IMG/VR virus record: IMGVR_UViG_3300049215_000771
Span: 1-64,000 of that record
DNA length: 64,000 bases
Direction: 5' to 3' (one strand)
In this document: in pieces, positions 13,184 through 55,660 of the stretch
How the letters are laid out: every line of letters begins with the position of its first letter
Position numbering within the stretch: position 1 is the first letter of the stretch
Made by a program: the position numbers and the translations under genes
The notes under the pieces: model-generated
The model's database searches: none
Told to the model about the DNA's origin: nothing
Seen by the model: the letters and a program-made list of their open reading frames with translations, nothing else

Positions 13184-13277
13184 GCCCTTGTAGCTCAATT
13201 GGTAGAGCATCTGACTCTTGTGCTAGAAAGCACCCAAGTTAATCAGAGGGTTCAGGGTTCGAGTCCCTGCGAGGGCA
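13184..13277 (+). tRNA. tRNA-Lys(CTT) (or Asn GTT) with 21-nt insertion in the anticodon loop
   Basis: Normal acceptor, D and T arms; TCTGA-CTCTT[GTGCTAGAAAGCACCCAAGTT]AA-TCAGA; A73 favours Lys. Confidence 0.75.
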
Positions 13278-13279
13278 CT

Positions 13280-25614: not shown

Positions 25615-25716
25615 GGGCGGGTAGCTCAGTGGCAGAGCGGCGATGACGCTGGACGGTTTTATAGTTGCCGGTTGCAGCTAATCGCAAGGTCGCTGGTTCA
25701 AATCCAGCCCCGCCCA
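25615..25716 (+). ncRNA. tRNA-like RNA with extended anticodon arm
   Basis: GGGCGGG/CCCGCCC, canonical D and T arms; GCGAT..ATCGC encloses ~36 nt instead of 7. Confidence 0.65.
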
Positions 25717-27216: not shown

Positions 27217-27314
27217 GGGAGCGTGGTGTAAAGGTAGCACACGAGACTTATAATCTCGGCCAAACGGTAGCGCCTGATTAGCGCTAGGTGAGGGTTCAAG
27301 TCCTTCCGCTCCTA
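27217..27314 (+). tRNA. tRNA-Ile(TAT) with oversized variable region
   Basis: CGAGA-CTTATAA-TCTCG; ~31-nt variable region with TAGCGC/GCGCTA hairpin. Confidence 0.75.
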
Positions 27315-29700: not shown

Positions 29701-30159
29701 ATGCGAAGAAAGAAACAACCTGAGAAACCCAAGCGGCCCAAGCAGGAAAAGCGCTGGCTCTCGCTATCGAAGCTGGAGGGTGTGCGTTGGATATGGGCTG
29801 ACAATTGGTGGGATTGGGTGTTGTCGGGGGTTGTCGAATATCAAGGCAAGCGGTACTATGCTGTTTGTGTTGATGAAAACTACGACAAGCGGTACAAGTG
29901 GTTCCGGCGCTATCTGATGGTAGATTTGCCGGAAGATGTGTGGAAAGACGAACTGGAGAGGCACGCTTTCTTTGTTGAGAAGGTTGGCAGTCACTTCGAG
30001 TTTGACGTAGAGCGTCAATGTCGGAAAGGCCCGGAGAAGTACCTGAAAGATTCTCGGACCTGGCATGAGTTCTACGAAAGGTATCCCAGCCCGACGCAGG
30101 GCGGGGAAGTGCGGGACTACAAGCAATACCCGCACATTGGCTGGTTTGAGAACGACTAA
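29701..30159 (+). CDS. hypothetical protein
   Basis: 152 aa aromatic-rich ORF. Confidence 0.6.
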   Translation: MRRKKQPEKPKRPKQEKRWLSLSKLEGVRWIWADNWWDWVLSGVVEYQGKRYYAVCVDENYDKRYKWFRRYLMVDLPEDVWKDELERHAFFVEKVGSHFEFDVERQCRKGPEKYLKDSRTWHEFYERYPSPTQGGEVRDYKQYPHIGWFEND

Positions 30160-31063
30160 CCTGGAGGATAGGTATGCGCCGCCTAGCTACGAGTTCGTGT
30201 CGTCTCGTTTCGAGAAGTTCGGGTTCCCGCTCGTAATTGACGAAACGATCATTCCCGACGACGACACGACGTTGTTTGTTTGCAGTGGGATGCAAAGGCT
30301 CAGGAACAAGTTTCTGACGCCGGATGGAAGCAAGCACGGCTCTCTACAGTCGTGCATTAGGACCAACGATCTGGAGTTGGTCGGCGATGGATCGCACCTT
30401 ACATATTTTCAAATGCTTGGTAATTTCTCATTTGGTGGGGATTACGAGCAGTCAGTTGAGCTATGGCACAATCTGCTCACTGATCTTCAGATCAAAATCG
30501 AACCAGTTCACTGTCATCCTGACAATCCTGGGCACCACCAGTTGTGGCGCAAGCGGGGATATGATACAGTTGACGATGTGTCGTGCGTCTGGAGTGACGG
30601 CCAGATTGGGGGCTACTGCTGCGAGGTTTATAGCCGGGGGTTGGAGATTGGCAATCTTGTCAATACCCTTGGGCATTCGACGGACGTGGGGTTTGGCTGG
30701 GAAAGGTTGTTCCTCATTGTCGAGGGCAAGGAGAGGGTCGATCAAACCTCCTTGTTCCTCAATCATCACCCAATTGTGGCGGATCACGCCCGGACGCTGG
30801 AAATCCTGTGGAAAAACAACGTAGTTCCTGGTACAAAGCATAGGAACTATGTTTGCCGCAGGCTCCTGCGGAGGATGCTGCGATACCTGAACGGCACAGA
30901 GAAATTCGTCTTTGACGAATGGCTCTCCCAGGAAAGAACGCAGCTAGAGCGTCGTGTCCGAGAGGCGAGAAAAATATGGCACAGGTACAAGCACCAGCCA
31001 TCCGAGTGGTGGTGGACGACCTGTGGTATATTGCCTGAAGAAGTTCCACTACTAGGGAGATGA
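30146..31063 (+). CDS. alaS: alanyl-tRNA synthetase, catalytic core only
   Basis: DTTLFVCSGMQ...QSCIRTNDLELVG...FQMLGNFSFG...DVGFGWERL...ADHAR...YVCRRLLRR; no editing or C-Ala domain. Confidence 0.85.
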   Translation: MRTTNLEDRYAPPSYEFVSSRFEKFGFPLVIDETIIPDDDTTLFVCSGMQRLRNKFLTPDGSKHGSLQSCIRTNDLELVGDGSHLTYFQMLGNFSFGGDYEQSVELWHNLLTDLQIKIEPVHCHPDNPGHHQLWRKRGYDTVDDVSCVWSDGQIGGYCCEVYSRGLEIGNLVNTLGHSTDVGFGWERLFLIVEGKERVDQTSLFLNHHPIVADHARTLEILWKNNVVPGTKHRNYVCRRLLRRMLRYLNGTEKFVFDEWLSQERTQLERRVREARKIWHRYKHQPSEWWWTTCGILPEEVPLLGR

Positions 31064-32077: not shown

Positions 32078-33943
32078 ATGGCAAACAAGAATCTGTTCAG
32101 CAAGCCGGGCGCACAGGGCCAGCATGTCGGTAGCGTTCCGAACGCCGACACCAAGAACGAGGCTGGCGGCAAGGCTTATTCCATGTCGAACGAGGCTGCC
32201 CTGGCGCAGTTCGTGGCGACTTCGTGCCTCAACGGTACGTTCCACACGTCGGCCAAGGATCAGCTTGATACCGTCAAGAAGCTGCTCGCCGGCTGCACCC
32301 CGGAGTTCATCGGCAAGGTTGCCATCTACGGTCGCCAGAGCGCCTTCATGAAGGATTTGCCGGCATTGTGCATCAGCCATCTGGCTGCCGACAACGGTGG
32401 CGGCAAGAACGCTGGTGATCCGTCCCGTCGTTCCGCCCCGTCGTGGACGGGTGGTCCGACCACGCCTGAGCAGGAGGCGAAGCAGGAAGTTCTCAACAAG
32501 GTTTTCCCGCACGTCATTGATTCTGGCACGATGGTCCGTAACTTCGTGCAGATGATCCGTTCCGGCGTGCTGGGCCGCAAGTCGCTGGGCTACAGCCTCC
32601 GTCACCTGGTTCGCCAGTGGTTCGAGAACCGCAGCCCGGCTACGATCTTCCACAACAGCATCGGCAACAACCCGACGCTGGGCGAAGTGATCCGTATCGC
32701 CCGTCCGAAGCCGAACACCCCGGAGAAGGCGGCTTTGTTCGCCTACCTGACGGGGGCGAAGGTCGTTGATGACGCCGAGGGGAAGGTACTCCGTACCTAC
32801 TTCAAGGACGACAGCGACGGCCAGGTGAAGGTTGCCTACGAACACCCGTTCGCCAACCTGCCGCAGATCGTGCAGCAGTTCGAGGCGTGGAAGGCGGACC
32901 AGACGCTTCCTCAGCCGAAGCTGAACTTCCGTTTCCTGGACGGCATCAAGAAGCTGTCTACTGCCGAGTGGACGGAAATCGCTCGGAACGCCAACTGGTT
33001 GACCACGTTGAAGTCCATGAACACCTACAAGGAGCATGGCGTATTCGATCAGCCTGGTATGGTGGAACTGATCTCGGCTCGGCTGGCTGACGCCAACGAA
33101 GTCGCCAAGGTCCGGGTTTTCCCGTACCAGATTCTCATCGCCTACCTTGCCTCCGAGGGCAAGGCTCCGCAGAAGGTCCGTGATGCTTTGCACGACGCAC
33201 TGGAAGCTGCTACTCGCAACGTGCCGGTGTTGACGGGCAAGGTCTACATCTGTGTGGACGTGTCGGGTTCGATGACGACGGGTCGGGTTACGGGCGACCG
33301 TGGCTCGGCGACGACGGCGGCTCGTTGTATCGACGTGGCGGCGCTGTACGCAGCCTCGCTGCTTCGTGTCAACAAGAGCGCCGAAGTCATTCCGTTCGAG
33401 GTAGGTGTCGTCCTGCCGAGCAAGCTGACGTTGGAACCACGGGACACCGTGATGACCAACGCCCGCAAGCTGGCGTCCATCGGCGGCGGTGGTACGAACT
33501 GTTCGGCTCCGCTGAACATGCTCAACCAGCGCAACGCCAAGGGCGATGTCGTTGTCTTCGTCAGCGACTACGAGTCGTGGGCCGATGGTCCGAACGCTCA
33601 CAACGGCAAGGCTACGGCCATGCTGGAGCAGTGGGCCATCTTCAAGAAGCGCAACCCGGACGCCAAGCTGGTTTGCATCGACTTGACGCCTCGTGCCAAC
33701 CACCAGGTTGTCGAGCGCCCGGACATCCTCCAGGTTGGCGGTTTCTCCGACAACGTGTTCAACGTCGTGGCTCGGTTCGCCGAGAGCGGCTGGGACAAGA
33801 ACTTCTGGCTCCAGGAGATCAACAAGATCGACCTGGACGCCTTGGGCGACCTGTGTGGCTCGAAGGCGAAGAAGCAAGATGCAGTGCAGGTTGAAGTCAC
33901 CGAGGCTGTCGGCGGTGATGAAGAGTCCGAAGAACAGCAGTAA
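32078..33943 (+). CDS. Ro60/Rsr TROVE + vWA domain RNA-binding protein
   Basis: NEAGG.AY...LAQ...FPYQ.L.AY...VDVSGSM...GGGGTNCSAPL...VSD.ESW...GGFSD.VF. Confidence 0.93.
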   Translation: MANKNLFSKPGAQGQHVGSVPNADTKNEAGGKAYSMSNEAALAQFVATSCLNGTFHTSAKDQLDTVKKLLAGCTPEFIGKVAIYGRQSAFMKDLPALCISHLAADNGGGKNAGDPSRRSAPSWTGGPTTPEQEAKQEVLNKVFPHVIDSGTMVRNFVQMIRSGVLGRKSLGYSLRHLVRQWFENRSPATIFHNSIGNNPTLGEVIRIARPKPNTPEKAALFAYLTGAKVVDDAEGKVLRTYFKDDSDGQVKVAYEHPFANLPQIVQQFEAWKADQTLPQPKLNFRFLDGIKKLSTAEWTEIARNANWLTTLKSMNTYKEHGVFDQPGMVELISARLADANEVAKVRVFPYQILIAYLASEGKAPQKVRDALHDALEAATRNVPVLTGKVYICVDVSGSMTTGRVTGDRGSATTAARCIDVAALYAASLLRVNKSAEVIPFEVGVVLPSKLTLEPRDTVMTNARKLASIGGGGTNCSAPLNMLNQRNAKGDVVVFVSDYESWADGPNAHNGKATAMLEQWAIFKKRNPDAKLVCIDLTPRANHQVVERPDILQVGGFSDNVFNVVARFAESGWDKNFWLQEINKIDLDALGDLCGSKAKKQDAVQVEVTEAVGGDEESEEQQ

Positions 33944-34404: not shown

Positions 34405-34773
34405 ATGAGGCATATGATGCACGCTAAGTTGGTGTACGAACACGCCGGTCGTCCCACTTGGACGATCTGTGATGTTATCTTGTACGAGCCGAACGACGAG
34501 ACGGCGAAGGTTATTGCCGTGTTCACGCAGCTTGATGCCCACCGGGGCGTGAGCATCACCAACTCCGTCGAGAGCGCCTGTGCCGCTTTCTGTGAAGATC
34601 GCAACGTATACCCTGACCAGTGTGTTTTCATCGAGCGGTATGAACATTCGCCCGAAGACCTGGACATGATTTTTCTCGATGAGTATGGCCAGAATCCTCG
34701 CTGGAAACGTCTTGCAAAGGAGCAATCGGCGGGTATACTAGCTGTTTTGCCCAAACCTAGCCTCGTGGTGTAA
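34405..34773 (+). CDS. hypothetical protein
   Basis: G.SITN..E.......F.E.Y......P.W motif. Confidence 0.6.
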   Translation: MRHMMHAKLVYEHAGRPTWTICDVILYEPNDETAKVIAVFTQLDAHRGVSITNSVESACAAFCEDRNVYPDQCVFIERYEHSPEDLDMIFLDEYGQNPRWKRLAKEQSAGILAVLPKPSLVV

Positions 34774-34888
34774 CGGTAGCACAACGGTCCTCTGAAAAGG
34801 GATAGTCTCGACACTATTTGTCCTTCGGGAATGCCGTTGGGATTACATTCATAATCCGTGTGTCCTGGTTCGAGTCCAGGCGAGGCGA
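34759..34888 (+). ncRNA. tRNA-scaffolded Y-RNA-like chimera, copy 5
   Basis: GCCTCG/CGAGGC acceptor, D and T arms; AGTCTCGAC-ACTATTTG-TCC-TTCG-GGA-ATGCC-GTTGGGA-TTACAT; residual TTCATAA-TCCGT. Confidence 0.75.
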
Positions 34889-37028: not shown

Positions 37029-39797
37029 ATGGGCACTCACAAAGACACACTGCTTCTCCCTCAGACCACACTCCCGATCAAGGCCGACTTGCCGGCCAAC
37101 GAGCCAGCAGTCTACAAAGCGTGGAATGAAAGCGACCTGATCCGGCGTATGCGCCGGGACGGGGACAATCCTTTCATCCTCCACGACGGCCCACCTTACG
37201 CCAATGGCGACATCCATATCGGTCATGCTCTCAACAAAATCTTGAAGGATTTTGCCGTCAAGGTCCAATACTTCAACGGGCGAGGCGTTGAGTTCGTGCC
37301 GGGTTGGGACTGCCACGGTTTGCCAATCGAACAGAAGGCTCGTCAACTCCACCCGGAGAGTCGAGACGAGTACGGCCTGCGGCAGATGTGCCGGCAGTAC
37401 GCCTCTCAACAGATCGACATCCAGCGTGAACAATTCAAAGCCCTGGGCGTCATCGCCGATTGGGAGCATCCATACACGACAATGGATCGTTCCTTCGAGT
37501 CGATGGTCTACAATCGACTTTGTGAACTTCTCGGCAAGGAGATGTTGATTCAGGGCAAGAAGCCCGTTTTCTGGTCCTGGGCCGAGCAAACGGCGCTGGC
37601 TGAGGCGGAAGTCGAGTACAAGGATCGCACCGATCCTTCGATCTATGTTGTGTTCCCGACTCAGGAAGCAACTTTTCCTGGTGGTTTTTTGGTGTGGACA
37701 ACTACGCCCTGGACTTTGCCTGCTAACGTCGCTGTTGCCCTGCACCCGGACCTGGATTATGTTCCTGTCAAGTTCAAGGACTATCCCTGGCCGCTCGTGG
37801 TCGCCGAAAATCTGGTGGAAGAACTGGCTGCCAAGGGCATCGTTGAAGGGAAACATTGGGTCAGCAAGTACAAAGGCAAAGACTTCTTGGGTTGGAAGCT
37901 GAAGCATCCGATCAATGGAACTGTGTCTGTCGTCATCAACGCCGACTTCGTGAAGGCTGACACTGGCACAGGTTGCGTCCATATCGCCCCTGGGCACGGC
38001 GAAGATGATTATTTCGTCGCCAGAAGCTACGGTCTGCCACTCGTTATGCCTGTTGGTCCAGATGGTAAGTACACCGAGGGCAAGTACGCCGGCCATTTCG
38101 TTTTCGACGCCAACAAGCAAATCCCCGAAGATTTGAAGACCAAGGGTTTGTTGCTTCATGAAGAAAAAATCACGCACAGCTACCCGCATTGCTGGCGTTC
38201 GGATACTCCGGTCATCTACCGGGCCACGCCACAATTGTTCCTGGATTTGAGCAAGATTCGGGAGTCCGTGTTGAAGGAATTCGCAGCCGTCGAGTTCCTG
38301 CCCGAAGCGTCGAAGAATCGCATGAAGCCGATGCTTGAATCCAGGCCCGACTGGTGCCTCAGTCGCCAGCGTATGTGGGGAGTTCCTATCGCTTTCGTTC
38401 GCAACAAGGAACAGGGCGTTTTTTCCTCTCATCCCGATGTGGTGAGATATACGCAGCGCATGTTGCAAGAAGAAGGCATTGACGTGTGGTGTCGGAAAAT
38501 GGTTGAAGAATGCCAACCGCCTTCTTGGTATGGGGCTATGTTCGTTGGTCTGACCAGCCAATACTTCGAGAAATGCACCGACATCTTAGATGTCTGGTTC
38601 GATAGCGGCCTCACCTGGAACACCCTCAACGGTCGCCAGGCGGACGTTTACCTGGAAGGGAACGATCAACACCGTGGTTGGTTCCAAAGCAGCTTGTGGC
38701 TGTCGGTGGCGCTGACGGGGAAGGCTCCGTACAAGAAGGTCATCACACATGGATTCGTCGTTGACCAAAACGGCGAGAAAATGTCGAAGCGGAAGGGGAA
38801 CGTCGTTGATCCGAACGACGTGGTGAGGAAGTACGGCGCTGAAGTTCTCCGCTATTGGGCGGCGTCCATCGACTACACGAAGGACATGACCTGTGGCGAA
38901 GACATCATGAAGCGTTGTGCCGAGGGACACAAGAAGCTGAGGAATACTTTCAGATTCCTCATCGCCAACATGATCGAGCCTGCCGGCGATATGGAGGGAC
39001 AGTACCTTCCGGTGGATCGGTGGATTCTCGACAAGGCGTGCCAGGTGTTCACGGAGGTTCACGATGCCTTCGAGAAATACGAATACTACAAGGGTCTGCA
39101 CAAGTTGACGGAGTTTGTCAACACGGACCTGAACGCCATCTATTTCAACGCCGTGAAGGATCGTTTGTACTGTGACGGCAAGAACAGTTTCGTGAGAAAC
39201 AGTGCCAACGTGACGATGATTTTACTGGCTGAGGGTTTGTTGAGTCTCGTGGCCCCGTTGTTTACCTACACGGCTCATGAAGTGTTCCAACATGCCCCTG
39301 ATTTCTTCAAGCTGGGACGCAAGGACATCTTCGATGTGACGTATGTTCAACCCGTACCGCTGCCCAAGTACGACTTCGTTGAATATCTGGACGAGGAATA
39401 CTGGAAGGCAGCTTTGAACGCTTTCCATGTCGAGTTCGACAAACTCAAGGCAGCGGGCCAGGTGAGAGACACGCTGGAAGTCAATATCGAACTCAAGGCA
39501 GGGGCGAGTCACCATTTCTTTGCCAAGGCCGAGGATTGGTTTGTGGTTTCTGACGTAACCGGAATGCCTACGGATGGCGAGCCGTTGGCTGAGTTTATGG
39601 CAATGGGTGATACTTACCGCATCGTCCGGGCTAGACAGGGAAAGTGTGACCGTTGCTGGAAGCGCAAGGCAGAAGGCAACTTGTGTCTACGGTGTCGCAA
39701 AGTATTGGAGGAAACCTGGACTTCGGCCTGCAAGGTCAAGTCTGATTTACAACCAGACCAGAACGTGGTAGAATCCTCCCCGGAGAAACAAACATGA
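37029..39797 (+). CDS. ileS: isoleucyl-tRNA synthetase
   Basis: HDGPPYANG.IHIGH, GWDCHGLPIE, WTTTPWTLP, DQHRGWFQS, KMSK, C-terminal CDRCW Zn finger. Confidence 0.97.
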   Translation: MGTHKDTLLLPQTTLPIKADLPANEPAVYKAWNESDLIRRMRRDGDNPFILHDGPPYANGDIHIGHALNKILKDFAVKVQYFNGRGVEFVPGWDCHGLPIEQKARQLHPESRDEYGLRQMCRQYASQQIDIQREQFKALGVIADWEHPYTTMDRSFESMVYNRLCELLGKEMLIQGKKPVFWSWAEQTALAEAEVEYKDRTDPSIYVVFPTQEATFPGGFLVWTTTPWTLPANVAVALHPDLDYVPVKFKDYPWPLVVAENLVEELAAKGIVEGKHWVSKYKGKDFLGWKLKHPINGTVSVVINADFVKADTGTGCVHIAPGHGEDDYFVARSYGLPLVMPVGPDGKYTEGKYAGHFVFDANKQIPEDLKTKGLLLHEEKITHSYPHCWRSDTPVIYRATPQLFLDLSKIRESVLKEFAAVEFLPEASKNRMKPMLESRPDWCLSRQRMWGVPIAFVRNKEQGVFSSHPDVVRYTQRMLQEEGIDVWCRKMVEECQPPSWYGAMFVGLTSQYFEKCTDILDVWFDSGLTWNTLNGRQADVYLEGNDQHRGWFQSSLWLSVALTGKAPYKKVITHGFVVDQNGEKMSKRKGNVVDPNDVVRKYGAEVLRYWAASIDYTKDMTCGEDIMKRCAEGHKKLRNTFRFLIANMIEPAGDMEGQYLPVDRWILDKACQVFTEVHDAFEKYEYYKGLHKLTEFVNTDLNAIYFNAVKDRLYCDGKNSFVRNSANVTMILLAEGLLSLVAPLFTYTAHEVFQHAPDFFKLGRKDIFDVTYVQPVPLPKYDFVEYLDEEYWKAALNAFHVEFDKLKAAGQVRDTLEVNIELKAGASHHFFAKAEDWFVVSDVTGMPTDGEPLAEFMAMGDTYRIVRARQGKCDRCWKRKAEGNLCLRCRKVLEETWTSACKVKSDLQPDQNVVESSPEKQT
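39746..39774 (+). promoter_or_regulatory. sigma70-type promoter
   Basis: TTTACA-N17-TAGAAT. Confidence 0.6.
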
Positions 39798-40204
39798 GCG
39801 AAGAAACCAGTATCACAAAGGAGTCCTTCCATGAAGCGCTAACCGCTGTGGTGACTTCCATCGCAGATCGGGCCGACGCCGAGATGCAAAAGGAAAAACC
39901 GTGGGCCGAATTGTGGGAGGCTTCCGAGGGTGGGCTGCGGTCCCTGCTCTCGGAAGCCGACCACCAGATGAAGGGTCCAGTATTCGCCCTTTGTGACATC
40001 ATCAAGAAGCGATTCGGCATCAAGAAAATCTCCGGTAAATTGTACGATTTGTTCAAGGCTCTGCCTTTCGCTATGTGGGAAGTCAGAGAACATATCAGCA
40101 ATACACAGGGAATGTCCTGTTGTGCTGACAAGGCACGGGAAGCCTACTACCAGGAGGTTCTTGAAGAAATCAACCGCATTAAAGGGGAAGAAAATGGCGG
40201 GTAA
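39794..40204 (+). CDS. hypothetical protein
   Basis: GGAG RBS, helical. Confidence 0.6.
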   Translation: MSEETSITKESFHEALTAVVTSIADRADAEMQKEKPWAELWEASEGGLRSLLSEADHQMKGPVFALCDIIKKRFGIKKISGKLYDLFKALPFAMWEVREHISNTQGMSCCADKAREAYYQEVLEEINRIKGEENGG

Positions 40205-41549
40205 AACGATTCACATCCTGGGCGGCGGGACCGTCAGCCATGTACGCAATCATCTAGCGTTGGCCGCACCCGCCTACGGTGGCACGGCCCGCCGCCTTTT
40301 CGACATCTGTGGCGACCAGTCGTTCATGGAACGTCGCCTTCATCTGACCATGATGGCCGGGGGTTATGGTTATCCCGGTGACAATCGCCAGATCAAGCTG
40401 GAAACAAACGAAGATGTGGCGGCGCTGTTGAAAGTTATCGCCGCCGACCCGGATACCAAGATCATCTTCATGACCTGTGCCCTGGTGGATTTCTACGGCG
40501 CTGTCGGCATGGTGAAAAGTGGCAAGCACGCCGAGCGGCTGCACAGCCGGACTCACAACAGGGGCCAATTCGTCGGCGAAGGCAACGATATGATGTTGTT
40601 TCCGAAGCCCAAGTTGCTGCCGGAAATTCGCAAGGACCGCAAGGACATTTACCTTGTCGCCTTCAAGACGACGACCGAGGCCACGGAAGACGAGCAATAC
40701 GCTGCCGCCCTGCATCTCCTGAAGGAAAGTTCCTGCAATCTCGTTCTCGCCAACGACGTGGTGACGAGAACCAACATGATCGTGACGCCCGAAGAGGCCC
40801 GCTATCACGTCACCAAGAATCGTGAGGAAGCCCTTTGGAACCTGGCGCAAATCGCCATCCTTCGGTCGCAACTGACCTTCACCCGTTCTACCGTCATCGA
40901 CGGCGAGCCGATCTCCTGGTACTCCGATCTGGTCCCCAACAGCTTGAGGGCCGTGGTCAACCACTGCATCTCCAGGGGAGCCTACAAGCCTTTTAACGGA
41001 GCCACGGTTGGGCATTTTGCTTGTAAGATAAACGACACAACTTTTCTTACAAGTATCAGAAAGTCCGACTTCAACCATCTGCCTGACACTGGCCTGGTGA
41101 TGGTCAAAACGGACGGCCCGGACTCCGTGATCGCCTATGGCGCAAAGCCAAGCGTGGGCGGGCAAAGTCAGCGCATCGTGTTCCACGATCACCCGGAGTA
41201 CGACTGCATCGTACACTTTCACTGCCCGAAGAAGGCAGGGTCGGAAGTTCCCACTGTCTCCCAGCGGGAGTTCGAGTGTGGATCGCATCAGTGTGGTCAG
41301 AACACGAGCAGTGGCCTGACGAAGTTCGGCAATCTGAGCGCTGTTTACCTGGATGAACACGGGCCGAACATCGTGTTCAATCATGAAATCAACCCGCAAG
41401 AAGTCATCGCCTTCATCGACAACAATTTCGATCTTTCCGGCAAGACGGGTGGGCTGATCCTCAGCTTGAATGACTACTTGCCGCATACGGAGGAACAATG
41501 TTCCAATATCACGGCAACAACGAGTGTCAATGTGTCATCTGCCGGCTGA
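40194..41549 (+). CDS. CoaB/DFP-like ligase domain fused to class II aldolase/adducin-like domain
   Basis: GGGT...ALVDF...LVAFK...LVLAND; then GHFA...KPSV...IVHFH...CGS. Confidence 0.7.
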   Translation: MAGKTIHILGGGTVSHVRNHLALAAPAYGGTARRLFDICGDQSFMERRLHLTMMAGGYGYPGDNRQIKLETNEDVAALLKVIAADPDTKIIFMTCALVDFYGAVGMVKSGKHAERLHSRTHNRGQFVGEGNDMMLFPKPKLLPEIRKDRKDIYLVAFKTTTEATEDEQYAAALHLLKESSCNLVLANDVVTRTNMIVTPEEARYHVTKNREEALWNLAQIAILRSQLTFTRSTVIDGEPISWYSDLVPNSLRAVVNHCISRGAYKPFNGATVGHFACKINDTTFLTSIRKSDFNHLPDTGLVMVKTDGPDSVIAYGAKPSVGGQSQRIVFHDHPEYDCIVHFHCPKKAGSEVPTVSQREFECGSHQCGQNTSSGLTKFGNLSAVYLDEHGPNIVFNHEINPQEVIAFIDNNFDLSGKTGGLILSLNDYLPHTEEQCSNITATTSVNVSSAG

Positions 41550-45810: not shown

Positions 45811-46194
45811 ATGGCAAAGGTGAAACTGTGCCCCAAGAAGTTGGGCAAGGAGATCGAATCGCTGAGGGGTGAAATGCCCCTGGAACAACTGTCCGAGGCC
45901 AGCGGCCTTTCTGTCGAGTACCTTCGCAATCTGGAGGCGGGGGACGTGCAGAAGGTCAAGAAGAAGGAACTCAAGCGGCTGGGCAAGGCGTTGCAAATGC
46001 CGACACCCTGCATCAAGATGATGGGTCTGGACCCTGCCGACGTTCCCGACAAGATTCTGTCGCAATTGGCCGGCACTGTTCAGCAGGCGATCAAGGCGTG
46101 CATCGCCGCTCGTCACGAGACGAACGGCAAGCATATCGACCTGACCAAAGAAGATGATCCCGCCAACAAGAAGAAGAAGAGCAAGAAGAAATGA
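45811..46194 (+). CDS. XRE-family HTH protein
   Basis: LEQLSEASGLSVEYLRNLEAG. Confidence 0.75.
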   Translation: MAKVKLCPKKLGKEIESLRGEMPLEQLSEASGLSVEYLRNLEAGDVQKVKKKELKRLGKALQMPTPCIKMMGLDPADVPDKILSQLAGTVQQAIKACIAARHETNGKHIDLTKEDDPANKKKKSKKK

Positions 46195-46697
46195 TCGAGA
46201 AGATCATCTCTGGCGGTCAGACCGGAGCCGATCAAGCTGGCCTACGGGCAGCTAAAGCGGTTGGCCTCGCTACGGGTGGATGGCTCCCCCAAGGGTGTAT
46301 TACTTTGGACGGGCCACGCCCGGACCTGTTGGAAATTTATTCCATGCAGGAACACCCCAAGAAGGGTTATCCAGCCCGTACCGAGGCCAACGTCAGAGAC
46401 TCAGACGGCACAATCCGCTTCGCCGAGAAGTTTGGCTCGCCCGGCGAAAAATGCACCCTCAAGGCCATCCATTGGTTCAGGAAGCCCTATTTGGATATTC
46501 CCATTCTCGCTATGTACAACGGCAAGGAGTGGGTTGCCAAAGCCATTGGTTATTCTCCCGCCGATGTTCTGGCCTGGGTGAAAGAAAACAACATCCGTGT
46601 ACTCAACGTCGCCGGCAACAGCGAACAAACCTGCAAAGGTATCGGCGACGTTGTACACGACTTCCTCGTGAAAGTATTCGGGGTGACGCATGATTGA
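46191..46697 (+). CDS. SLOG-family (putative molybdenum-carrier/YpsA-like) protein
   Basis: KIISGGQTGADQAGL...RTEANVRDSDGT...LNVAG. Confidence 0.85.
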   Translation: MIEKIISGGQTGADQAGLRAAKAVGLATGGWLPQGCITLDGPRPDLLEIYSMQEHPKKGYPARTEANVRDSDGTIRFAEKFGSPGEKCTLKAIHWFRKPYLDIPILAMYNGKEWVAKAIGYSPADVLAWVKENNIRVLNVAGNSEQTCKGIGDVVHDFLVKVFGVTHD

Positions 46698-47694
46698 TTT
46701 CGAGCGTGGGTCCAAGGTGACGGGATCGAAGTTCTACTTCCTCACGGGCGATGAAGCACTCATGGAGTGGAACCTCATCAACTTCATGCTGGCCTATCAT
46801 CAGCGCAACGGCTGGAATTTTGTCATTCCTCCGTACCTCATCAACAAAAACACCGGCACCCAGGCTGGCATCTTGCCTCGCTTCGAGGGCGACTACTACC
46901 AGACCCAGGAAGGGCTGATGCTGATTCCTACCGCTGAAACGCCGCTGGTGGGGATGCACAGCGATGAAATCTTCAAGGAAGAAGACTTGCCCATCAAGTA
47001 CGTCGCCTTCTCGCCGTGTTTTCGCAAAGAAGCCGGCAGCTACGGAGCGAAGGACAAGGGCTACAAGCGGGTTCATCAGTTTCACAAGATTGAACTTTTC
47101 GCTATCACGACGCCTGACCAGTCGGGCATCATGCAGGAGCGTATGGTTTTCGAGATCGGCGAGATGCTGACCGGAATGGGCGTCAACTGGCGCTCGGTGG
47201 AACTGCCGCCCGAAGAACGCAGCCCGGTGTCGAATAAAACCATTGACTTGGAAGTGAAAGTCGGCGATGATTGGTTGGAGGTTTCGTCGATTTCCAACAC
47301 AGGCGACAACCAAAGCAAACCGGCACAGATTCGCTACAAGCCGAAGAACGGCGGCAAGAACATCAAATGTCACTTGCTCAATGGGTCTGGCGTGGCTTTG
47401 CCCCGGCTGATGTTGGCGTTGGCGGATCGTGCCGACGTGTGGGCTAATCCGTTTCCGCCTTTGAAGGCTTTCGCCAAGCGCCCGCTGACGGTTGCCAACC
47501 TTGCAGTGGCTCTACGCTGTAAGCCTGACGACATCATTGCCCGCCTGAAGCATTATTGTGCCCATCCCGACGCCAAGTTGTGGGACGCCATCATTACTCC
47601 TAGCACGGTGGTCGATCCTGAGATGGCCCGGCTGCTCGCAAGGGAGAATGGTTATGGACTTGAAATTGAGGACAAGGAGCGACCCACGGAATAA
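46690..47694 (+). CDS. serS: seryl-tRNA synthetase catalytic core lacking the N-terminal arm, with IF2_N-like C-terminal domain
   Basis: LIPTAE.P, FRKEAGSYG, RVHQF.KIE, EVSSISN, H.LNGSG.A.PR. Confidence 0.88.
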   Translation: MIDFERGSKVTGSKFYFLTGDEALMEWNLINFMLAYHQRNGWNFVIPPYLINKNTGTQAGILPRFEGDYYQTQEGLMLIPTAETPLVGMHSDEIFKEEDLPIKYVAFSPCFRKEAGSYGAKDKGYKRVHQFHKIELFAITTPDQSGIMQERMVFEIGEMLTGMGVNWRSVELPPEERSPVSNKTIDLEVKVGDDWLEVSSISNTGDNQSKPAQIRYKPKNGGKNIKCHLLNGSGVALPRLMLALADRADVWANPFPPLKAFAKRPLTVANLAVALRCKPDDIIARLKHYCAHPDAKLWDAIITPSTVVDPEMARLLARENGYGLEIEDKERPTE

Positions 47695-48107
47695 ATACGT
47701 CCGCTATACAGTGGGTGGCGGATACGTTATGCCTGGCGGGGTTTGGCTTGAGAGGGACGCCTGGCGATATGACGACCCACTATCATTCGATGGTATTTTC
47801 ACAATCGCTCGCACCGAGAAGAACAAGGGGCGATTCACCAAAGAAAATGCCAAAATAATCGCCGACACATTCGCCTGGTACAACAACAATATACCTTGTC
47901 CGACTTGGACTGACTGGAAAGAAGCTGGTGTGTGGAGGCCAGATTGGATATGCTGGTGGAGACTTAGCGCCAAGGAAGCGATTCGCCGGATGCAGCCTAT
48001 GATCCGGGCCATGAGGAAGCATGGTATCGTGATCTGCACTTTGTATACAGATCGGTTGTCGGGTATAAAATACCGAGACAAATACCAGGTCGTTGCGGAA
48101 TGTCCTC

Positions 48108-48577: not shown

Positions 48578-48988
48578 ATGAAGAAGTTCCTTTCTCTCGC
48601 CCTTGTGATGGGAGCGATGTTGCTCCTGACCAACACTGCCAACGCTCAGTGCCGTATCTTCGGCGGACGCTGCGGCGGGTATTCCTGCGGGCCTGTCTAC
48701 TACAGCCAGCCGGTTTACTACAGCCAGCCGGTTTACTACAGCGTTCCGTCCTGTGGCCAGGTCTACTACAGCCAGCCGGTGTACTACTCGGCTCCTGTGA
48801 CGACCTATTACTACAACGGGTGCGGCCCGTATTCGTGTGGAAGGGTGTATTACAGCACTCCGGTCTACACACAGCCCTATACCTACCCGGCCCCCTCCGT
48901 CGATGCGACTGGCGGCATTCCCACACCAGCCGATCAGCCGAAGAAGATTACGCTTCCGGCTCCAAGTTCCATCGACCCCGGCAAGTAA
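48578..48988 (+). CDS. secreted Tyr/Pro-rich repeat protein
   Basis: Signal peptide ending ANA; repeated VYYSQP; AGGAGG RBS. Confidence 0.7.
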   Translation: MKKFLSLALVMGAMLLLTNTANAQCRIFGGRCGGYSCGPVYYSQPVYYSQPVYYSVPSCGQVYYSQPVYYSAPVTTYYYNGCGPYSCGRVYYSTPVYTQPYTYPAPSVDATGGIPTPADQPKKITLPAPSSIDPGK

Positions 48989-49110: not shown

Positions 49111-50442
49111 ATGTCTGACCCTATCCGAACCAGGTTTGCTCCGAGTCCGACTGGCTTCCTGCATATCGGCGGGGTCCGCACGGCCTTGTACAACTGGCTT
49201 TTGGCCCGCAAGATGGGCGGCAAGTTCGTTCTGAGGATCGACGATACCGACACGGGGCGCAATGTTCAAGAAGCCCTCCAGCCCATTCTTGATGGCTTCA
49301 AGTGGCTCGGCCTGAATTGGGACGAAGGACCGGAAGTGGACGGACCCTATGGCCCGTACTACCAGTCCCAGCGAACCAAGATTTATCAGGGCTACTTTGC
49401 CATTCTCCAGTCACGCAACGAAGTGTACCAGGACAAGGGCGCTTGGCGTTTGAAGATGCAGACTGGCGATCAACAACTCATGATCGACGACCTGGTTCGG
49501 GGACGTGTGACCTGGGATGTGAAGAATTTGACGCACCGAGGCGATCCGGTGATCGTCCGCAGCGATGGTACGTTTCTCTACAACTTCGCTACGGTTTGTG
49601 ACGATCACGACATGAAGATCACTCATGTCCTTCGTGCCGAGGAACATCTTTCCAACACACCAGTTCAATTGAAGATTTACGAGGCGTTGGGCATGAAGCC
49701 GCCGTTGTTCGGACATCTTCCTTTCGTGTGTTCCCCTGGCTCCAAGAAGAAACTGAGCAAGCGTGATGCAGTGCCGGTGACGGTCGAATACTACAAAAAT
49801 GTCGGTTATACACAGTCCGGCATTCTCAACTACTTGGCGTTGCTGGGTTGGTCGCTGGACGACCGCACTGAGTTGTTCACCCTTCAGGAGTTGATTGACG
49901 GTTTTTCCATCAAGGGCATCCACAACGCCCCGGCCAGCTTCGACCCGAAGAAGATGCTGCATATCAATGCCGAGCATATGAAGCTGTTGCCCAATGTCAA
50001 AGTGGATCGCTGTGCCGATCACCTTCGGTCGCTGGGTATCGAGCCGGATATGGAGATGGTTAAGAAGGTCGTGGAGGCGTGTGGCGACCGTATCAAGACG
50101 TTCAACGATATTTCGGGTTATGGTATTTTCTTCTTTCGTGACCCGGAGTATAACGAGGAAGCATTCCAGAAGCGACTTGGCGGGGAGCATTTTGATCCCG
50201 CCTACAAGTTCGTGTTGGGCATCAAGGAAGTCACGCCGTTCGATTCCAAGACCTTGGAAGCAAAACTCCATGAGTATTGTGAACAGAACGGCCTGAAGGT
50301 GGGCGATATGGTTCACGCCATTCGCATCGCCATCACCGGCCAACCTATTGGGCCGGGTGTGTTTGACTGCCTCTCTATCCTTGGGCCAGACGAATCGGTA
50401 CGCCGGTTCAATATGGCCTGGAGGAAGAAACGAGGCTTGTAA
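49111..50442 (+). CDS. gltX: glutamyl-tRNA synthetase
   Basis: RFAPSPTGFLHIGG, LRIDDTD, KLSKR, anticodon-binding domain; short acceptor-binding insertion. Confidence 0.95.
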   Translation: MSDPIRTRFAPSPTGFLHIGGVRTALYNWLLARKMGGKFVLRIDDTDTGRNVQEALQPILDGFKWLGLNWDEGPEVDGPYGPYYQSQRTKIYQGYFAILQSRNEVYQDKGAWRLKMQTGDQQLMIDDLVRGRVTWDVKNLTHRGDPVIVRSDGTFLYNFATVCDDHDMKITHVLRAEEHLSNTPVQLKIYEALGMKPPLFGHLPFVCSPGSKKKLSKRDAVPVTVEYYKNVGYTQSGILNYLALLGWSLDDRTELFTLQELIDGFSIKGIHNAPASFDPKKMLHINAEHMKLLPNVKVDRCADHLRSLGIEPDMEMVKKVVEACGDRIKTFNDISGYGIFFFRDPEYNEEAFQKRLGGEHFDPAYKFVLGIKEVTPFDSKTLEAKLHEYCEQNGLKVGDMVHAIRIAITGQPIGPGVFDCLSILGPDESVRRFNMAWRKKRGL

Positions 50443-53252: not shown

Positions 53253-55010
53253 ATGAACAAGGAAATCTACAAGCCAGACCTGTTTGACTGGCATGAAGGC
53301 AAGCAGACCTTCTATATCACCACTGCCATTGACTACCCGAATGCCAAACCACACATCGGTACGGCCTTCGAGAAGATCGGTGCAGACATCCAGGCTCGCT
53401 TCTGGCGATTCCTGGGCCATGAAGTCTTCTTCCTCATGGGGAACGATGAGAACACCGTCAAAGTGTTGAAGGCTGCACAAACCGATGGTTACTCCAGTTA
53501 CAAGGAGATGACCATCAAAGCCTACGCCGACCGCATGGCCGAGGAGTTCAAGGAAGTCTGGCGGGCGCTGGATATTTCCAACGACGATTTTATCCAGACC
53601 AGCGAGCAACGCCACAAGATTGGCGTGCAGCACTTCATTCAGACCGTGTATGACGCCGGTTTCATCTACAAGAAGCCTTACGCCGGCTGGTACTGTGAGG
53701 GGTGTGAGGAATTCAAGCTGGAGAAGAACCTTCAGGACGTGGCCGGTCACAAAATCTGCCCGAACCACCCACTGTCGCTGGTGTGGCGTGAGGAGGAGAA
53801 CTACTTCTTCAAATTGTCGGCGTTCAAACAGTGGATTCTGGATTTGTACGTTCCGGCTTTCGACTCGCCCTACACCGAGGTTCTTCCCGCAGCCCGGCTC
53901 AACGAAATGGAGAATTTCGTCAAGGGTGAACTGGATGATATTTCCATCAGTCGCAAGAACGAAGGCTGGGGCATTCCGGTTCCCTGGGACGAATCCCAGG
54001 TCATCTACGTTTGGTTCGACGCCTTGTTGAACTACCTGACTGGCATTGGTTTCCCCGACCCCAAGTTCCAGAAGTGGTGGCCGGCACGGTGTCACGTCAT
54101 CGGCAAGGACATCACCCGCTTCCACTGTGCCTTGTGGCCGGCAATGATCCATGCCTACAACCAGAAGGCCACGGTGAAGCTGTGTGCCCCGGAGAAGGTG
54201 TTCGCACACGGTTTCATCTACCAGAAGAAGGGGGATGAGGCTATCAAGGTGTCGAAAAGCGGCACCAGCATCAACCCGATGGACCTGGTTGAGAAGTACG
54301 GCAGCGATGCCTACAGGTACTACTTCATGTCGAAGTGTTCCTTCGCCCACGACGGCGAGTACAGCTTGCAGCACTTCAATGAAGTCTACAATGCTGAACT
54401 GGCGAACAACCTGGGCAATCTTGCCAGTCGGGTCGGGAATATGGTCCTCAAGAATCTGGAGGGCATCATTCCGAGCAAGGAGGCGATTGAGAAAACGGGC
54501 AACTTGACGGACGTTGGCTACAACTTCTTCACCATCGAAAGCCTCAACGAGTGGGTGAAGGCGACGGAAGCCTTTGACTATCGCCGTGGCCTGGGTATCG
54601 TGTGGGAAATTCTCATCCGTGCCAACAGGTACTTCGACGATAGGAAGCCCTGGACCTTGGCCCGGAAGAAGGGTGAGCCGCTGGACCAGGATAAGGTGAT
54701 CCAGCTTGCTTCTACCCTTCGCAACACTGTTGCCATGATTCGGTGTGTGGCGATTTTGCTGAAACCTTATCTCCCCAGGGCATCGGAAAAGTTGTATAAT
54801 ACCTACGACTGGCCGGTGAAATGGGAAGACCTGAGCTACAATCATCTCCTGGAGATCGTCAAGGAGAACGATTGTGGGTCGAGGGACGAGTTCCGGCTGA
54901 ATCCGACTGCACTGGTGAAGGATGAAAACAACAAAACAGGCGACATCCATTTCCTCAAGTACCCAGCCTTGTTCCCCAGGGTTGAACTTAAAAAAGATGA
55001 GGCAGTCTAA
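53253..55010 (+). CDS. metG: methionyl-tRNA synthetase
   Basis: FYITTAIDYPN..PHIG, YVWFDALLNY, IGKDI.RFH, KVSKS, LAN.LGNL. Confidence 0.95.
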   Translation: MNKEIYKPDLFDWHEGKQTFYITTAIDYPNAKPHIGTAFEKIGADIQARFWRFLGHEVFFLMGNDENTVKVLKAAQTDGYSSYKEMTIKAYADRMAEEFKEVWRALDISNDDFIQTSEQRHKIGVQHFIQTVYDAGFIYKKPYAGWYCEGCEEFKLEKNLQDVAGHKICPNHPLSLVWREEENYFFKLSAFKQWILDLYVPAFDSPYTEVLPAARLNEMENFVKGELDDISISRKNEGWGIPVPWDESQVIYVWFDALLNYLTGIGFPDPKFQKWWPARCHVIGKDITRFHCALWPAMIHAYNQKATVKLCAPEKVFAHGFIYQKKGDEAIKVSKSGTSINPMDLVEKYGSDAYRYYFMSKCSFAHDGEYSLQHFNEVYNAELANNLGNLASRVGNMVLKNLEGIIPSKEAIEKTGNLTDVGYNFFTIESLNEWVKATEAFDYRRGLGIVWEILIRANRYFDDRKPWTLARKKGEPLDQDKVIQLASTLRNTVAMIRCVAILLKPYLPRASEKLYNTYDWPVKWEDLSYNHLLEIVKENDCGSRDEFRLNPTALVKDENNKTGDIHFLKYPALFPRVELKKDEAV

Positions 55011-55503: not shown

Positions 55504-55585
55504 GGGGTTATAGCTTAATGGAAGAGTGGCGAGGTAAGGCCCAAGTGGTCCCTCGCAGGTAGGGGTTCGACTCCCCTTAGCTCCA
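55504..55585 (+). ncRNA. tRNA-like RNA with enlarged anticodon loop
   Basis: GGGGTTA/TAGCTCC (Ala-like G3:U70), AGGGG-TTCGACT-CCCCT; GCGAGG..CCTCGC encloses 16 nt. Confidence 0.6.
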
Positions 55586-55660
55586 CTGAATGAAAGGCAT
55601 CCTGATACTTCTGATTCTCTCCCTAATCATCGCCATCACCGCAATCCTGACGAGGAAAAA

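What the first reader, a model, noticed from the sequence alone, without database searches (positions are those of the whole stretch)
46690..47694. SerRS core without its tRNA-binding arm but with an IF2_N-like tail
Seen: the protein starts near motif 1, lacking the N-terminal coiled coil. It ends with PLTVANLAVALRCKPDDIIARL..VVDPEMARLLARENGY, matching the IF2 N-terminal repeat pattern. Established: the coiled coil reads the long variable arm of tRNA-Ser, and IF2_N resembles stem-contact folds of synthetases. Inference: a swapped RNA- or ribosome-binding module giving new substrate specificity.
Basis: partly seen in the sequence, partly recalled or inferred. Interest (0 to 1): 0.62.

Follow-up and report, generated by a model that had tools for sequence, protein, structure and literature searches.

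The report
Armless phage SerRS with IF2-type tail
A huge phage from moss encodes a stripped-down seryl-tRNA synthetase that lacks its tRNA-grasping arm and has instead picked up, at its end, a copy of the small domain that initiation factor IF2 uses to hold on to the small ribosomal subunit, a combination seen in only two proteins so far.

Summary
ORF 46690..47694 (+, 334 aa) is a bacterial-type SerRS catalytic core (residues 1-246, model positions 150-397 of 418). It has no coiled-coil arm, and no arm gene is found elsewhere in the 533-kb phage genome. Residues 265-327 are an IF2_N domain of the N2 type, the copy next to IF2's G domain. Evidence: profile-profile probability 97% (score 43 against at most 17 in 200 shuffles), and every top PDB and ESM-Atlas structural match is IF2. 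In IF2 this domain binds 16S rRNA helix h16 on the 30S shoulder.

Arm loss is not tied to the tail. At least 120 sequence clusters from large phage contigs are armless cores of about 250 aa, and 118 have no tail. The tail occurs only in P0001 and P0002, inside a four-member subclade, and their closest relative P0003 lacks it. It is a late add-on, not a swap.

Best reading: a dimeric, catalytically intact minimal SerRS that this lineage tethers to the ribosome or another structured RNA through an IF2-N2 mimic. The domain identities are shown. The tethering, and what the armless core charges, are inferred.

The parts
46690..47694 (+). Whole gene: armless SerRS core plus IF2-N2-like tail, 334 aa (P0001), stop codon included
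   Evidence: The identical protein occurs on independent contigs and samples.
46690..47427 (+). SerRS class II catalytic core, residues 1-246 (equivalent to positions ~150-397 of bacterial SerRS)
   Evidence: TIGR00414 E 7e-75; 2dq3_A E 6.9e-53; AF2 model pLDDT mostly above 85
46747..46845 (+). Motif 1 helix-strand (residues 20-52), the predicted dimer interface
   Evidence: Alignment to solved SerRS. The homodimer model puts its contacts at residues 6-55, 70-92 and 107-132.
46924..46947 (+). TxE serine-binding motif (IPTAETPL, residues 79-86); T81 and E83 are invariant in the family
46999..47100 (+). Motif 2 with fRxE and the acceptor-stem loop (residues 104-137); R112, E114, R127, H129 and F131 are invariant
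   Evidence: The loop has low pLDDT, as expected of a flexible tRNA-contact loop.
47272..47316 (+). W-L-E-V-S-S-I-S-N segment (residues 195-209), aligned to the E-I-S-S-C-S-N segment of solved SerRSs; E197 and S200 are invariant
47371..47427 (+). Motif 3 (HLLNGSGVALPRLMLALAD, residues 228-246); R239 is invariant. Most family members end here.
47428..47481 (+). Linker or extension (residues 247-264, RADVWANPFPPLKAFAKR). It is conserved in P0002 and partly in P0004, and aligns with the extension of IF2 N2 that wraps the h16 minor groove.
47482..47670 (+). IF2_N (N2-type) globular domain, residues 265-327
   Evidence: hhalign 95-97%; Foldseek and VIA top hits are IF2 N2; Atlas TM 0.58-0.70, rmsd 1.8-2.9 A; best hit of a bacterial IF2_N HMM among 5553 frames of the genome
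47557..47583 (+). Nine-residue insertion (CAHPDAKLW, residues 290-298) forming an extra short helix. It is absent from P0002 and from IF2.
47515..47523 (+). R276-C277-K278 loop between helices 1 and 2. It aligns with S277-V278-K279 of P. aeruginosa IF2, the main h16 contact.
46191..46697 (+). Upstream gene, cpYpsA/SLOG-type (168 aa), overlapping the start by 8 nt. It is not a SerRS arm.

Best explanation
The gene encodes a phage member of a large, conserved family of minimal SerRS proteins. These consist of a class II catalytic core only, with no coiled-coil arm, no first ~45 core residues and no C-terminal segment. The core keeps every residue needed to make seryl-adenylate, and it keeps the motif 2 loop that reads the tRNA acceptor stem. 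It is predicted to form the usual motif-1 homodimer. In this one small lineage the core has captured, at its C-terminus, the N2 sub-domain of bacterial IF2 together with its preceding extension. In IF2 that module anchors the factor to helix h16 of 16S rRNA on the 30S shoulder. The most likely working model is that the tail docks the SerRS core on the small ribosomal subunit, or on another A-form RNA helix, so that serylation of tRNA-Ser happens at or near translating ribosomes. The phage's four tRNA-Ser all carry the acceptor stem GGAAGGU plus G73. The core itself would recognise tRNA mainly through the acceptor end, or would borrow the arm of a host SerRS subunit. Shown: the domain identities, the conserved active-site residues, the absence of an arm gene, and the distribution and phylogeny of the tail. 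Inferred: catalysis, dimerisation, 30S binding and the tRNA substrate.
For: Core: serS model E 7e-75, positions 151-397, and solved SerRS E 6.9e-53. The invariant family columns include T81/E83 (TxE), R112/E114 (motif 2), E197/S200 and G232-S233-G234/R239 (motif 3). Homodimer model: score 0.91 against a best control of 0.00; that mark was reached by 21 of 30 proteins solved as pairs of one chain and by 0 of 23 solved as single chains; the three runs agree in 100% of their contacts and the partner's pLDDT is at least 88. No arm elsewhere in the genome: the serS model hits only this core, and an HMM of 57 cellular SerRS N-termini gives a best E of 0.63 over 5553 frames. Tail: hhalign 95-97%, score 43.1 against at most 17.3 in 200 shuffles. 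Foldseek ranks 1-4 are all IF2, led by 7uiu, 'N2 sub-domain of IF2 bound to the 30S subunit'. VIA Z values are 8.1, 7.6, 6.9 and 5.0 for IF2 against 4.5 for the next fold. Atlas matches are all IF2 clusters, most listing PF04760, TM 0.58-0.70. The tail fits the N2 profile better than the N1 profile from the same genomes (score 55 against 32). P0002's tail is 35-40% identical to IF2 N2 segments. N2 binds h16 through S277-V278-K279 and R259 plus an extension in the minor groove (PMC9192638). P0001 has K278 at the K279 position and K259 next to the R259 position. Context: the gene sits in a translation island with 38 tRNA genes, IleRS, MetRS and GluRS. The tail region is present, identical, in metatranscriptome contigs.
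Against: No binding or activity was measured. 118 of 120 family members work without the tail, and the nearest relative has lost it, so whatever the tail does is dispensable. P0002 has proline where P0001 has K278, so the h16 contact is not strictly conserved. The Foldseek E-value is marginal (2.7e-3), rmsd to the experimental N2 is 6-7 A, and Pfam's own model has no hit on record. The homodimer pass may reflect the predictor's memory of solved SerRS dimers. Deleting the arm from E. coli SerRS is reported to cripple tRNA charging (my recollection of Borel et al. 1994, not checked here), so an autonomous armless SerRS needs some compensation that has not been identified.
Confidence: 0.4

Rival explanations
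1. One reading: the IF2_N tail binds tRNA itself (for example the long variable arm, the acceptor/T-arm helix, or one of the phage's insert-bearing tRNA-like RNAs). It thereby replaces the lost coiled coil and sets a new substrate specificity.
For: The tail is an RNA-helix-binding module with a basic extension. The phage encodes four long-arm tRNA-Ser, a Ser-like UCA-anticodon tRNA and several tRNAs with anticodon-loop inserts.
Against: The tail is absent from 118 of 120 armless relatives and has been lost in the nearest one, so it cannot be the family's substitute for the arm. The only documented RNA partner of this domain type is 16S h16. No synthetase stem-contact domain appeared among the structural matches.
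Confidence: 0.2
2. The armless core works only as a heterodimer with the host's full-length SerRS. The host subunit's arm holds the tRNA and delivers its 3' end across the dimer into the phage subunit's active site. Alternatively the phage subunit poisons host SerRS. The tail is an accessory.
For: The motif 1 interface is retained and confidently modelled. Cross-subunit tRNA binding is the established SerRS mechanism, and the paralog SLIMP is reported to form a heterodimer with mitochondrial SerRS (PMC9437257). No arm gene is present in the phage.
Against: The family is at most 45% identical to any cellular SerRS found and occurs in many different large phage contigs, which makes a conserved fit to varied hosts uncertain. 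The homodimer model passes its controls. The host is unknown, so no heterodimer could be tested.
Confidence: 0.15
3. The core is not a tRNA synthetase in practice. It makes seryl-adenylate and passes serine to a non-tRNA acceptor (a carrier protein, a metabolite or a nucleic-acid modification), as the SerRS-like amino acid:carrier-protein ligases do.
For: Truncated SerRS homologues without a tRNA-binding domain are known to have such roles (aa:CP ligases, listed in PMC9437257).
Against: This core is bacterial-type, not the methanogen-type from which aa:CP ligases derive (E 7e-75 against about 2e-4). No carrier-protein gene and no conserved neighbour lies beside any family member examined. The motif 2 acceptor-stem loop is conserved. 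The gene sits among tRNAs and other synthetases.
Confidence: 0.1
4. The tail binds a protein or DNA rather than rRNA (as the N1 copy of IF2 binds NusA, or as structurally similar MerR/excisionase-type domains bind DNA). Alternatively it is a functionless recent capture on its way to being lost.
For: IF2's N1 copy of the same fold binds NusA (PMC12297416). The next structural neighbours are the DNA-binding Par, RacA and BldC domains. The tail is rare, evolves faster than the core (47-48% against 82% identity) and has been lost at least once.
Against: It matches the N2 profile clearly better than the N1 profile. IF2 stands well above the DNA-binding folds (Z 8.1-5.0 against 4.5 or less). The fold, the hydrophobic core and the extension are kept in two lineages whose tails are only 47-48% identical.
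Confidence: 0.15

Closest known systems
Bacterial-type seryl-tRNA synthetase (serS, TIGR00414; e.g. Aquifex aeolicus 2DQ3, Thermus thermophilus 1SER)
   Same: Class II core with motifs 1, 2 and 3, the TxE and E-x-S-S serine-pocket residues, a motif 2 loop of bacterial length, and a predicted motif-1 homodimer.
   Different: It lacks residues ~1-150 (the whole coiled-coil arm and the first part of the core) and the ~20 residues after motif 3. It scores below the family cut-off (252.6 against 301.65 bits). It is at most 45% identical to any cellular SerRS found. It carries a foreign C-terminal domain.
N2 (N/G1) sub-domain of bacterial IF2, Pfam IF2_N PF04760 (PDB 7UIU, 7UNV, 9H9H)
   Same: Same fold and order of elements, including the preceding extension. 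The profile match is 97%. A basic residue sits at the h16-contact position.
   Different: It sits at the C-terminus of a synthetase instead of in front of a GTPase domain. It carries a nine-residue extra helix (290-298). The conserved N-Q-x-L-D of IF2 reads S-T-V-V-D. It is 19-28% identical to IF2 segments. Binding to h16 is untested.
SerRS-like amino acid:carrier-protein ligases (Bradyrhizobium, Agrobacterium) and the SerRS paralog SLIMP
   Same: These are natural SerRS relatives that have left the standard architecture. The aa:CP ligases also lack a tRNA-binding domain, and SLIMP pairs with a canonical SerRS (PMC9437257).
   Different: aa:CP ligases derive from the methanogen-type SerRS and sit next to carrier-protein genes, and neither is true here. 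SLIMP retains tRNA binding and has lost aminoacylation activity, whereas here the arm is gone and the catalytic residues are invariant.
Archaeal SerRS that associates with the ribosome (PMC4005694 and PMC10817482; titles and abstracts only, seen)
   Same: A precedent for a seryl-tRNA synthetase physically associated with the ribosome to recycle or channel tRNA.
   Different: [quoted passage not shown] Here a borrowed IF2 domain would target 16S h16 on the small subunit.

Membership tests
Bacterial-type SerRS (TIGR00414 serS equivalog) | Class II motifs 1, 2 and 3 and the serine-pocket residues | tested here: met
   Alignments to the model and to 2dq3_A. Invariant family columns: T81, E83, R112, E114, E197, S200, G232-G234, R239.
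Bacterial-type SerRS (TIGR00414 serS equivalog) | N-terminal antiparallel coiled-coil tRNA-binding arm | tested here: not met
   The match starts at model position 151 of 418, with an in-frame stop directly upstream. No arm-like ORF exists in the genome.
Bacterial-type SerRS (TIGR00414 serS equivalog) | Whole-protein score above the curated cut-off | tested here: not met
   252.6 bits against a cut-off of 301.65.
Bacterial-type SerRS (TIGR00414 serS equivalog) | Serylation of tRNA-Ser | not testable with these tools
   Needs an aminoacylation assay.
IF2_N / IF2 N2 sub-domain (PF04760) | Sequence-profile match to the IF2_N repeat | tested here: met
   hhalign 95.0% and 96.9%, with shuffle control. 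Top hit of an IF2-only HMM in the genome, E 0.014. No hit of Pfam's own model is on record.
IF2_N / IF2 N2 sub-domain (PF04760) | Small fold of three helices packed against short strands, with an N-terminal extension | tested here: met
   AF2 tail model, pLDDT 74. IF2 is the top match in PDB and in the Atlas, rmsd 1.8-2.9 A over 68-77 residues.
IF2_N / IF2 N2 sub-domain (PF04760) | Position directly upstream of the IF2 G domain | tested here: not met
   The domain is C-terminal to a synthetase core. The phage's only IF2-model hit is a 396-aa GTPase at 490 kb with no such domain.
IF2_N / IF2 N2 sub-domain (PF04760) | Binding to 16S rRNA h16 at the 30S shoulder | not testable with these tools
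   Only the position equivalence K278 to K279 could be shown.
Amino acid:carrier-protein ligases (SerRS-like) | Descent from the methanogen-type SerRS core | tested here: not met
   Methanogen-type models reach only E 2.3e-4 and 3.2e-4, against 7e-75 for the bacterial type.
Amino acid:carrier-protein ligases (SerRS-like) | Adjacent carrier-protein gene | tested here: not met
   No PP-binding family appears among the neighbours in the loci examined.

The most novel reading that the evidence does not exclude
Huge phages carry a conserved class of minimal, armless SerRS enzymes that charge tRNA without the canonical long-variable-arm readout. One lineage has gone further and bolted on IF2's 30S anchor. 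That would create a ribosome-docked synthetase, which recharges tRNA-Ser at the shoulder of the small subunit and may compete with host IF2 for h16.
Probability: 0.25. Interest if true: 0.8.

Novelty: new variant of a known kind. Interest (0 to 1): 0.62.

Why it matters
SerRS is the textbook case of a synthetase that recognises its tRNA by shape, through the coiled-coil arm and the long variable arm. A large, strongly conserved phage family that has discarded the arm yet keeps every catalytic residue raises a direct question: how little protein is needed to serylate a tRNA, or what else does such a core do? The fusion to IF2's ribosome anchor is a natural experiment in placing a synthetase on the ribosome. 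It also gives a simple handle (with or without the tail) for testing tRNA channelling and phage takeover of translation. Finally, it shows that the IF2 N2 module can be moved between proteins.

Tried and rejected
1. Single-sequence and library searches with the tail found nothing useful. This covers NCBIfam and PHROGs, phmmer against PDB and phmmer against 1.84 billion representatives. The last gave one hit, P0121, a tandem-repeat artefact. Word-indexed searches restricted to the tail or run with the two-tail alignment also found nothing, as did IMG/VR. These blanks reflect the short, divergent domain, not absence of homology.

2. Split-gene idea: the ORF downstream of tail-less P0003 (L005 2401-2733) is not tail-like, and no tail remnant lies there. 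P0004's downstream ORFs appear to match the window's own downstream ORFs by size and order, but no DNA could be fetched.

3. A separate arm gene: none was found.

4. A second IF2_N-like domain on another phage protein: none was found.

5. A conserved partner gene beside family members: none was found.

6. Literature: no paper found in four searches describes armless phage SerRS or a SerRS-IF2_N fusion. The huge-phage paper does not mention seryl.

7. Host inference: several of the nearest Atlas rows and the best BLAST matches are Verrucomicrobiota IF2s, but my IF2 sample was 30 of 39 from that phylum, so this is only a hint.

Full report
WHAT IS THERE

The ORF at 46690..47694 (+) encodes 334 aa (P0001). 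The open frame is 335 codons, so a stop lies directly upstream and no longer N-terminus can be read. The window is the first 64 kb of a 532,729-bp virus record. The window carries 38 tRNA genes and the genome 58. In the window the gene lies in a translation island with a full IleRS (37029..39797), a MetRS (53253..55010) and a GluRS (about 49126..50442). The same DNA is held by moss metagenomes.

THE CORE

Residues 1-246 match the bacterial serS model over positions 151-397 of 418 (E 7e-75). The score is 252.6 bits, below the curated 301.65, because the N-terminal third and the last ~20 positions are missing. The best solved relatives are bacterial and archaeal SerRSs, aligned from their residue ~150 (2dq3_A, E 6.9e-53). 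Methanogen-type SerRS models score only about 2e-4.

The AlphaFold model is confident (mean pLDDT 82.7). It is weak only at residues 1-13 and in the motif 2 loop, residues 115-128.

A homodimer of residues 1-250 scores 0.91 against 0.00 for the best of three controls. That mark was reached by 21 of 30 proteins solved as pairs of one chain and by 0 of 23 proteins solved as single chains. The three runs agree in 100% of their contacts, and the partner's pLDDT is at least 88. The interface runs through the motif 1 region. The tool warns that such a pass can come from memory of solved SerRS dimers.

A FAMILY, NOT A ONE-OFF

The word-indexed search of 5.8 billion proteins returned, as its best 120 hits, proteins that are 60-86% identical to P0001. 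Almost all are 245-265 aa long. Several lie on contigs of 232-673 kb.

In the 30-member alignment, 28 begin directly at M-x-D-F-E-R-G-A-K; P0028 and P0120 carry extra N-terminal residues ahead of the motif. Nearly all end a few residues after motif 3. The invariant columns include the TxE motif, the motif 2 R-x-E, E-V-S-S and the motif 3 G-S-G...R.

The closest cellular SerRSs found among 185,579 species genomes are only 38-45% identical, and they come from many phyla. In the tree, the 120 phage proteins form one group apart from the seven cellular sequences (support 0.69).

No SerRS arm is encoded elsewhere in this genome. The serS model hits only this core and a weak second class II enzyme. 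An HMM built from 57 cellular SerRS N-termini gives a best E of 0.63 over all 5553 frames of at least 50 aa. The neighbours of family members differ from contig to contig, so there is no linked partner gene.

THE TAIL

Residues 247-334 are shared only with P0002 (324 aa). The two tails are 47-48% identical, with a conserved W-A-x-P-F-P-P-L-K linker.

Library and single-sequence searches see nothing in the tail, and the precomputed Pfam record lists only PF00587.

Directed tests are clear.

(a) I took the segments just upstream of the G domain from 9 and then 39 bacterial IF2 genes. hhalign of the two tails against them gives 95.0% (E 3.8e-8, 55 columns) and 96.9% (E 1.3e-10, 62 columns). The real score is 43.1, against a maximum of 17.3 in 200 column shuffles (mean 9.2, sd 2.0) and 11.4 for the reversed sequence.

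(b) An HMM made only from the 9 bacterial segments picks this tail as its best hit among all 5553 frames of the phage genome (E 0.014).

(c) The tail alone folds with pLDDT 74 as strand-helix-helix-(extra helix)-bridge-helix-strand. Foldseek ranks four IF2 entries first among 350,542 chains, led by 7UIU, 'N2 sub-domain of IF2 bound to the 30S subunit' (E 2.7e-3, TM 0.57/0.59). VIA-align gives Z 8.1, 7.6, 6.9 and 5.0 for the IF2 entries, against 4.5 for the next, unrelated fold. However, rmsd is 6-7 A over 75-78 residues.

(d) Two ESM-Atlas searches were run, one with the Atlas's own model and one with mine. All 10 listed rows of each are IF2 clusters, most listing PF04760, with TM 0.58-0.70 and rmsd 1.8-2.9 A over 68-77 residues.

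(e) The tail fits the N2 copy (score 55-58) better than the N1 copy (score 32) taken from the same genomes.

(f) P0002's tail is 35-40% identical to some IF2 N2 segments.

WHAT THAT DOMAIN DOES IN IF2

[quoted passage not shown] Ser277, Val278, Lys279 and Arg259 form the main interface, and an extension wraps the minor groove (PMC9192638).

Aligning the tail with IF2 segments and with the PDB chain puts P0001 R276-C277-K278 on S277-V278-K279. It puts K259 next to the R259 position. P0002 has proline at the K278 column but a lysine two residues earlier.

The N1 copy of the same fold binds NusA in E. coli (PMC12297416). A protein partner therefore cannot be excluded, although the tail is N2-like.

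HOW THE TAIL RELATES TO ARM LOSS

On a maximum-likelihood tree of the core, P0001, P0002 and P0003 form a clade (support 0.91), with P0004 as its sister (0.97). P0003 (252 aa) is nested beside P0002 and has no tail. P0004 ends after a linker-like ...R-K-E-W-T-V-N-T-P-P-Q-L-K. The other 116 proteins have no such tail. No tail remnant lies downstream of P0003.

The simplest history is that the family lost the arm long ago, this small lineage gained the IF2 module, and the module was then lost again at least once. The tail is therefore an add-on that modulates an already armless enzyme, not the replacement for the arm.

MECHANISM

Shown: an intact SerRS active site, an N2-type IF2_N domain at the C-terminus, no arm anywhere in the genome, and a rare, lineage-restricted tail.

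Inferred: the protein is a homodimer that activates serine. It charges tRNA-Ser either by acceptor-end recognition or with the help of a host subunit's arm. The four phage tRNA-Ser share the acceptor stem GGAAGGU and G73 and have normal long variable arms. The tail would dock the enzyme on the 30S shoulder.

I put this composite at about 0.4. Direct tRNA binding by the tail, an obligate heterodimer with host SerRS, a non-tRNA acceptor, and a protein/DNA-binding or functionless tail remain open.

EXPRESSION HINT

Contigs from plant and moss metatranscriptome libraries cover 46542-46877 and 47405-47705 without a mismatch. A DNA contig from a different sample covers 46469-47705 identically. RNA libraries can contain DNA, so this is weak support for transcription. 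It is good support that the fusion is not an assembly error.

NOVELTY

I found no description of armless phage SerRS or of a synthetase-IF2_N fusion in four literature searches or in the huge-phage survey. Both parts belong to known families, and the architecture is new.

Noticed in passing
window 30065-31063 (+): A 332-aa ORF matches only the N-terminal catalytic part of AlaRS (model positions 17-165 of 847, E 3.8e-27). It is a second 'core-only' class II synthetase in the same phage.
   Followed up: no
window 32078-33943 (+) and 34759-34888 (+): A 621-aa ORF has an Rsr/Ro60-like C-terminal half (E 1.1e-22) in an unusually G+C-rich stretch (0.607). About 800 nt downstream lies a 130-nt tRNA-model match with a 37-nt insert, which may be a Y-RNA-like partner with a tRNA-like module.
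   Followed up: partly
window 13184-13278, 25615-25716, 27217-27314, 55504-55586 (+): These tRNA genes are 82-102 nt long. ARAGORN reads them only with 11-25-nt inserts in the anticodon loop: Lys-CTT, Ile-TAT, Leu-AAG, and one long-variable-arm species read as TTA. They could be introns or tRNA-like RNAs.
   Followed up: partly
G000:C1:80837-80930 (+), 121393-121540 (+), 491736-491826 (-), outside the window: The genome carries a 94-nt tRNA with anticodon TCA, whose acceptor stem resembles that of the phage tRNA-Ser, and three tRNAs with anticodon CTA, one with a long variable arm. They may be stop-codon suppressors. The window's ORFs read normally under code 11.
   Followed up: partly
window 46191-46697 (+): A cpYpsA/SLOG-type gene (PF12694) overlaps the SerRS start by 8 nt. 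It is present at the same place in P0004's contig but absent in those of P0002 and P0003, where an HTH gene abuts the SerRS gene.
   Followed up: no
window 48578-48988 (+): A 136-aa ORF has a hydrophobic, signal-like N-terminus and repeated P-V-Y-Y-S-Q/T units. It lies inside the long upstream frame of the GluRS ORF.
   Followed up: no
window 39993-41549 (+): A 518-aa ORF has a weak match to phosphopantothenate-cysteine ligase (E 1.5e-7).
   Followed up: no
L130 3757-4926: In a 622-kb relative, a TnpB/Cas12f-like gene (OrfB_IS605) sits directly upstream of the armless SerRS gene.
   Followed up: no
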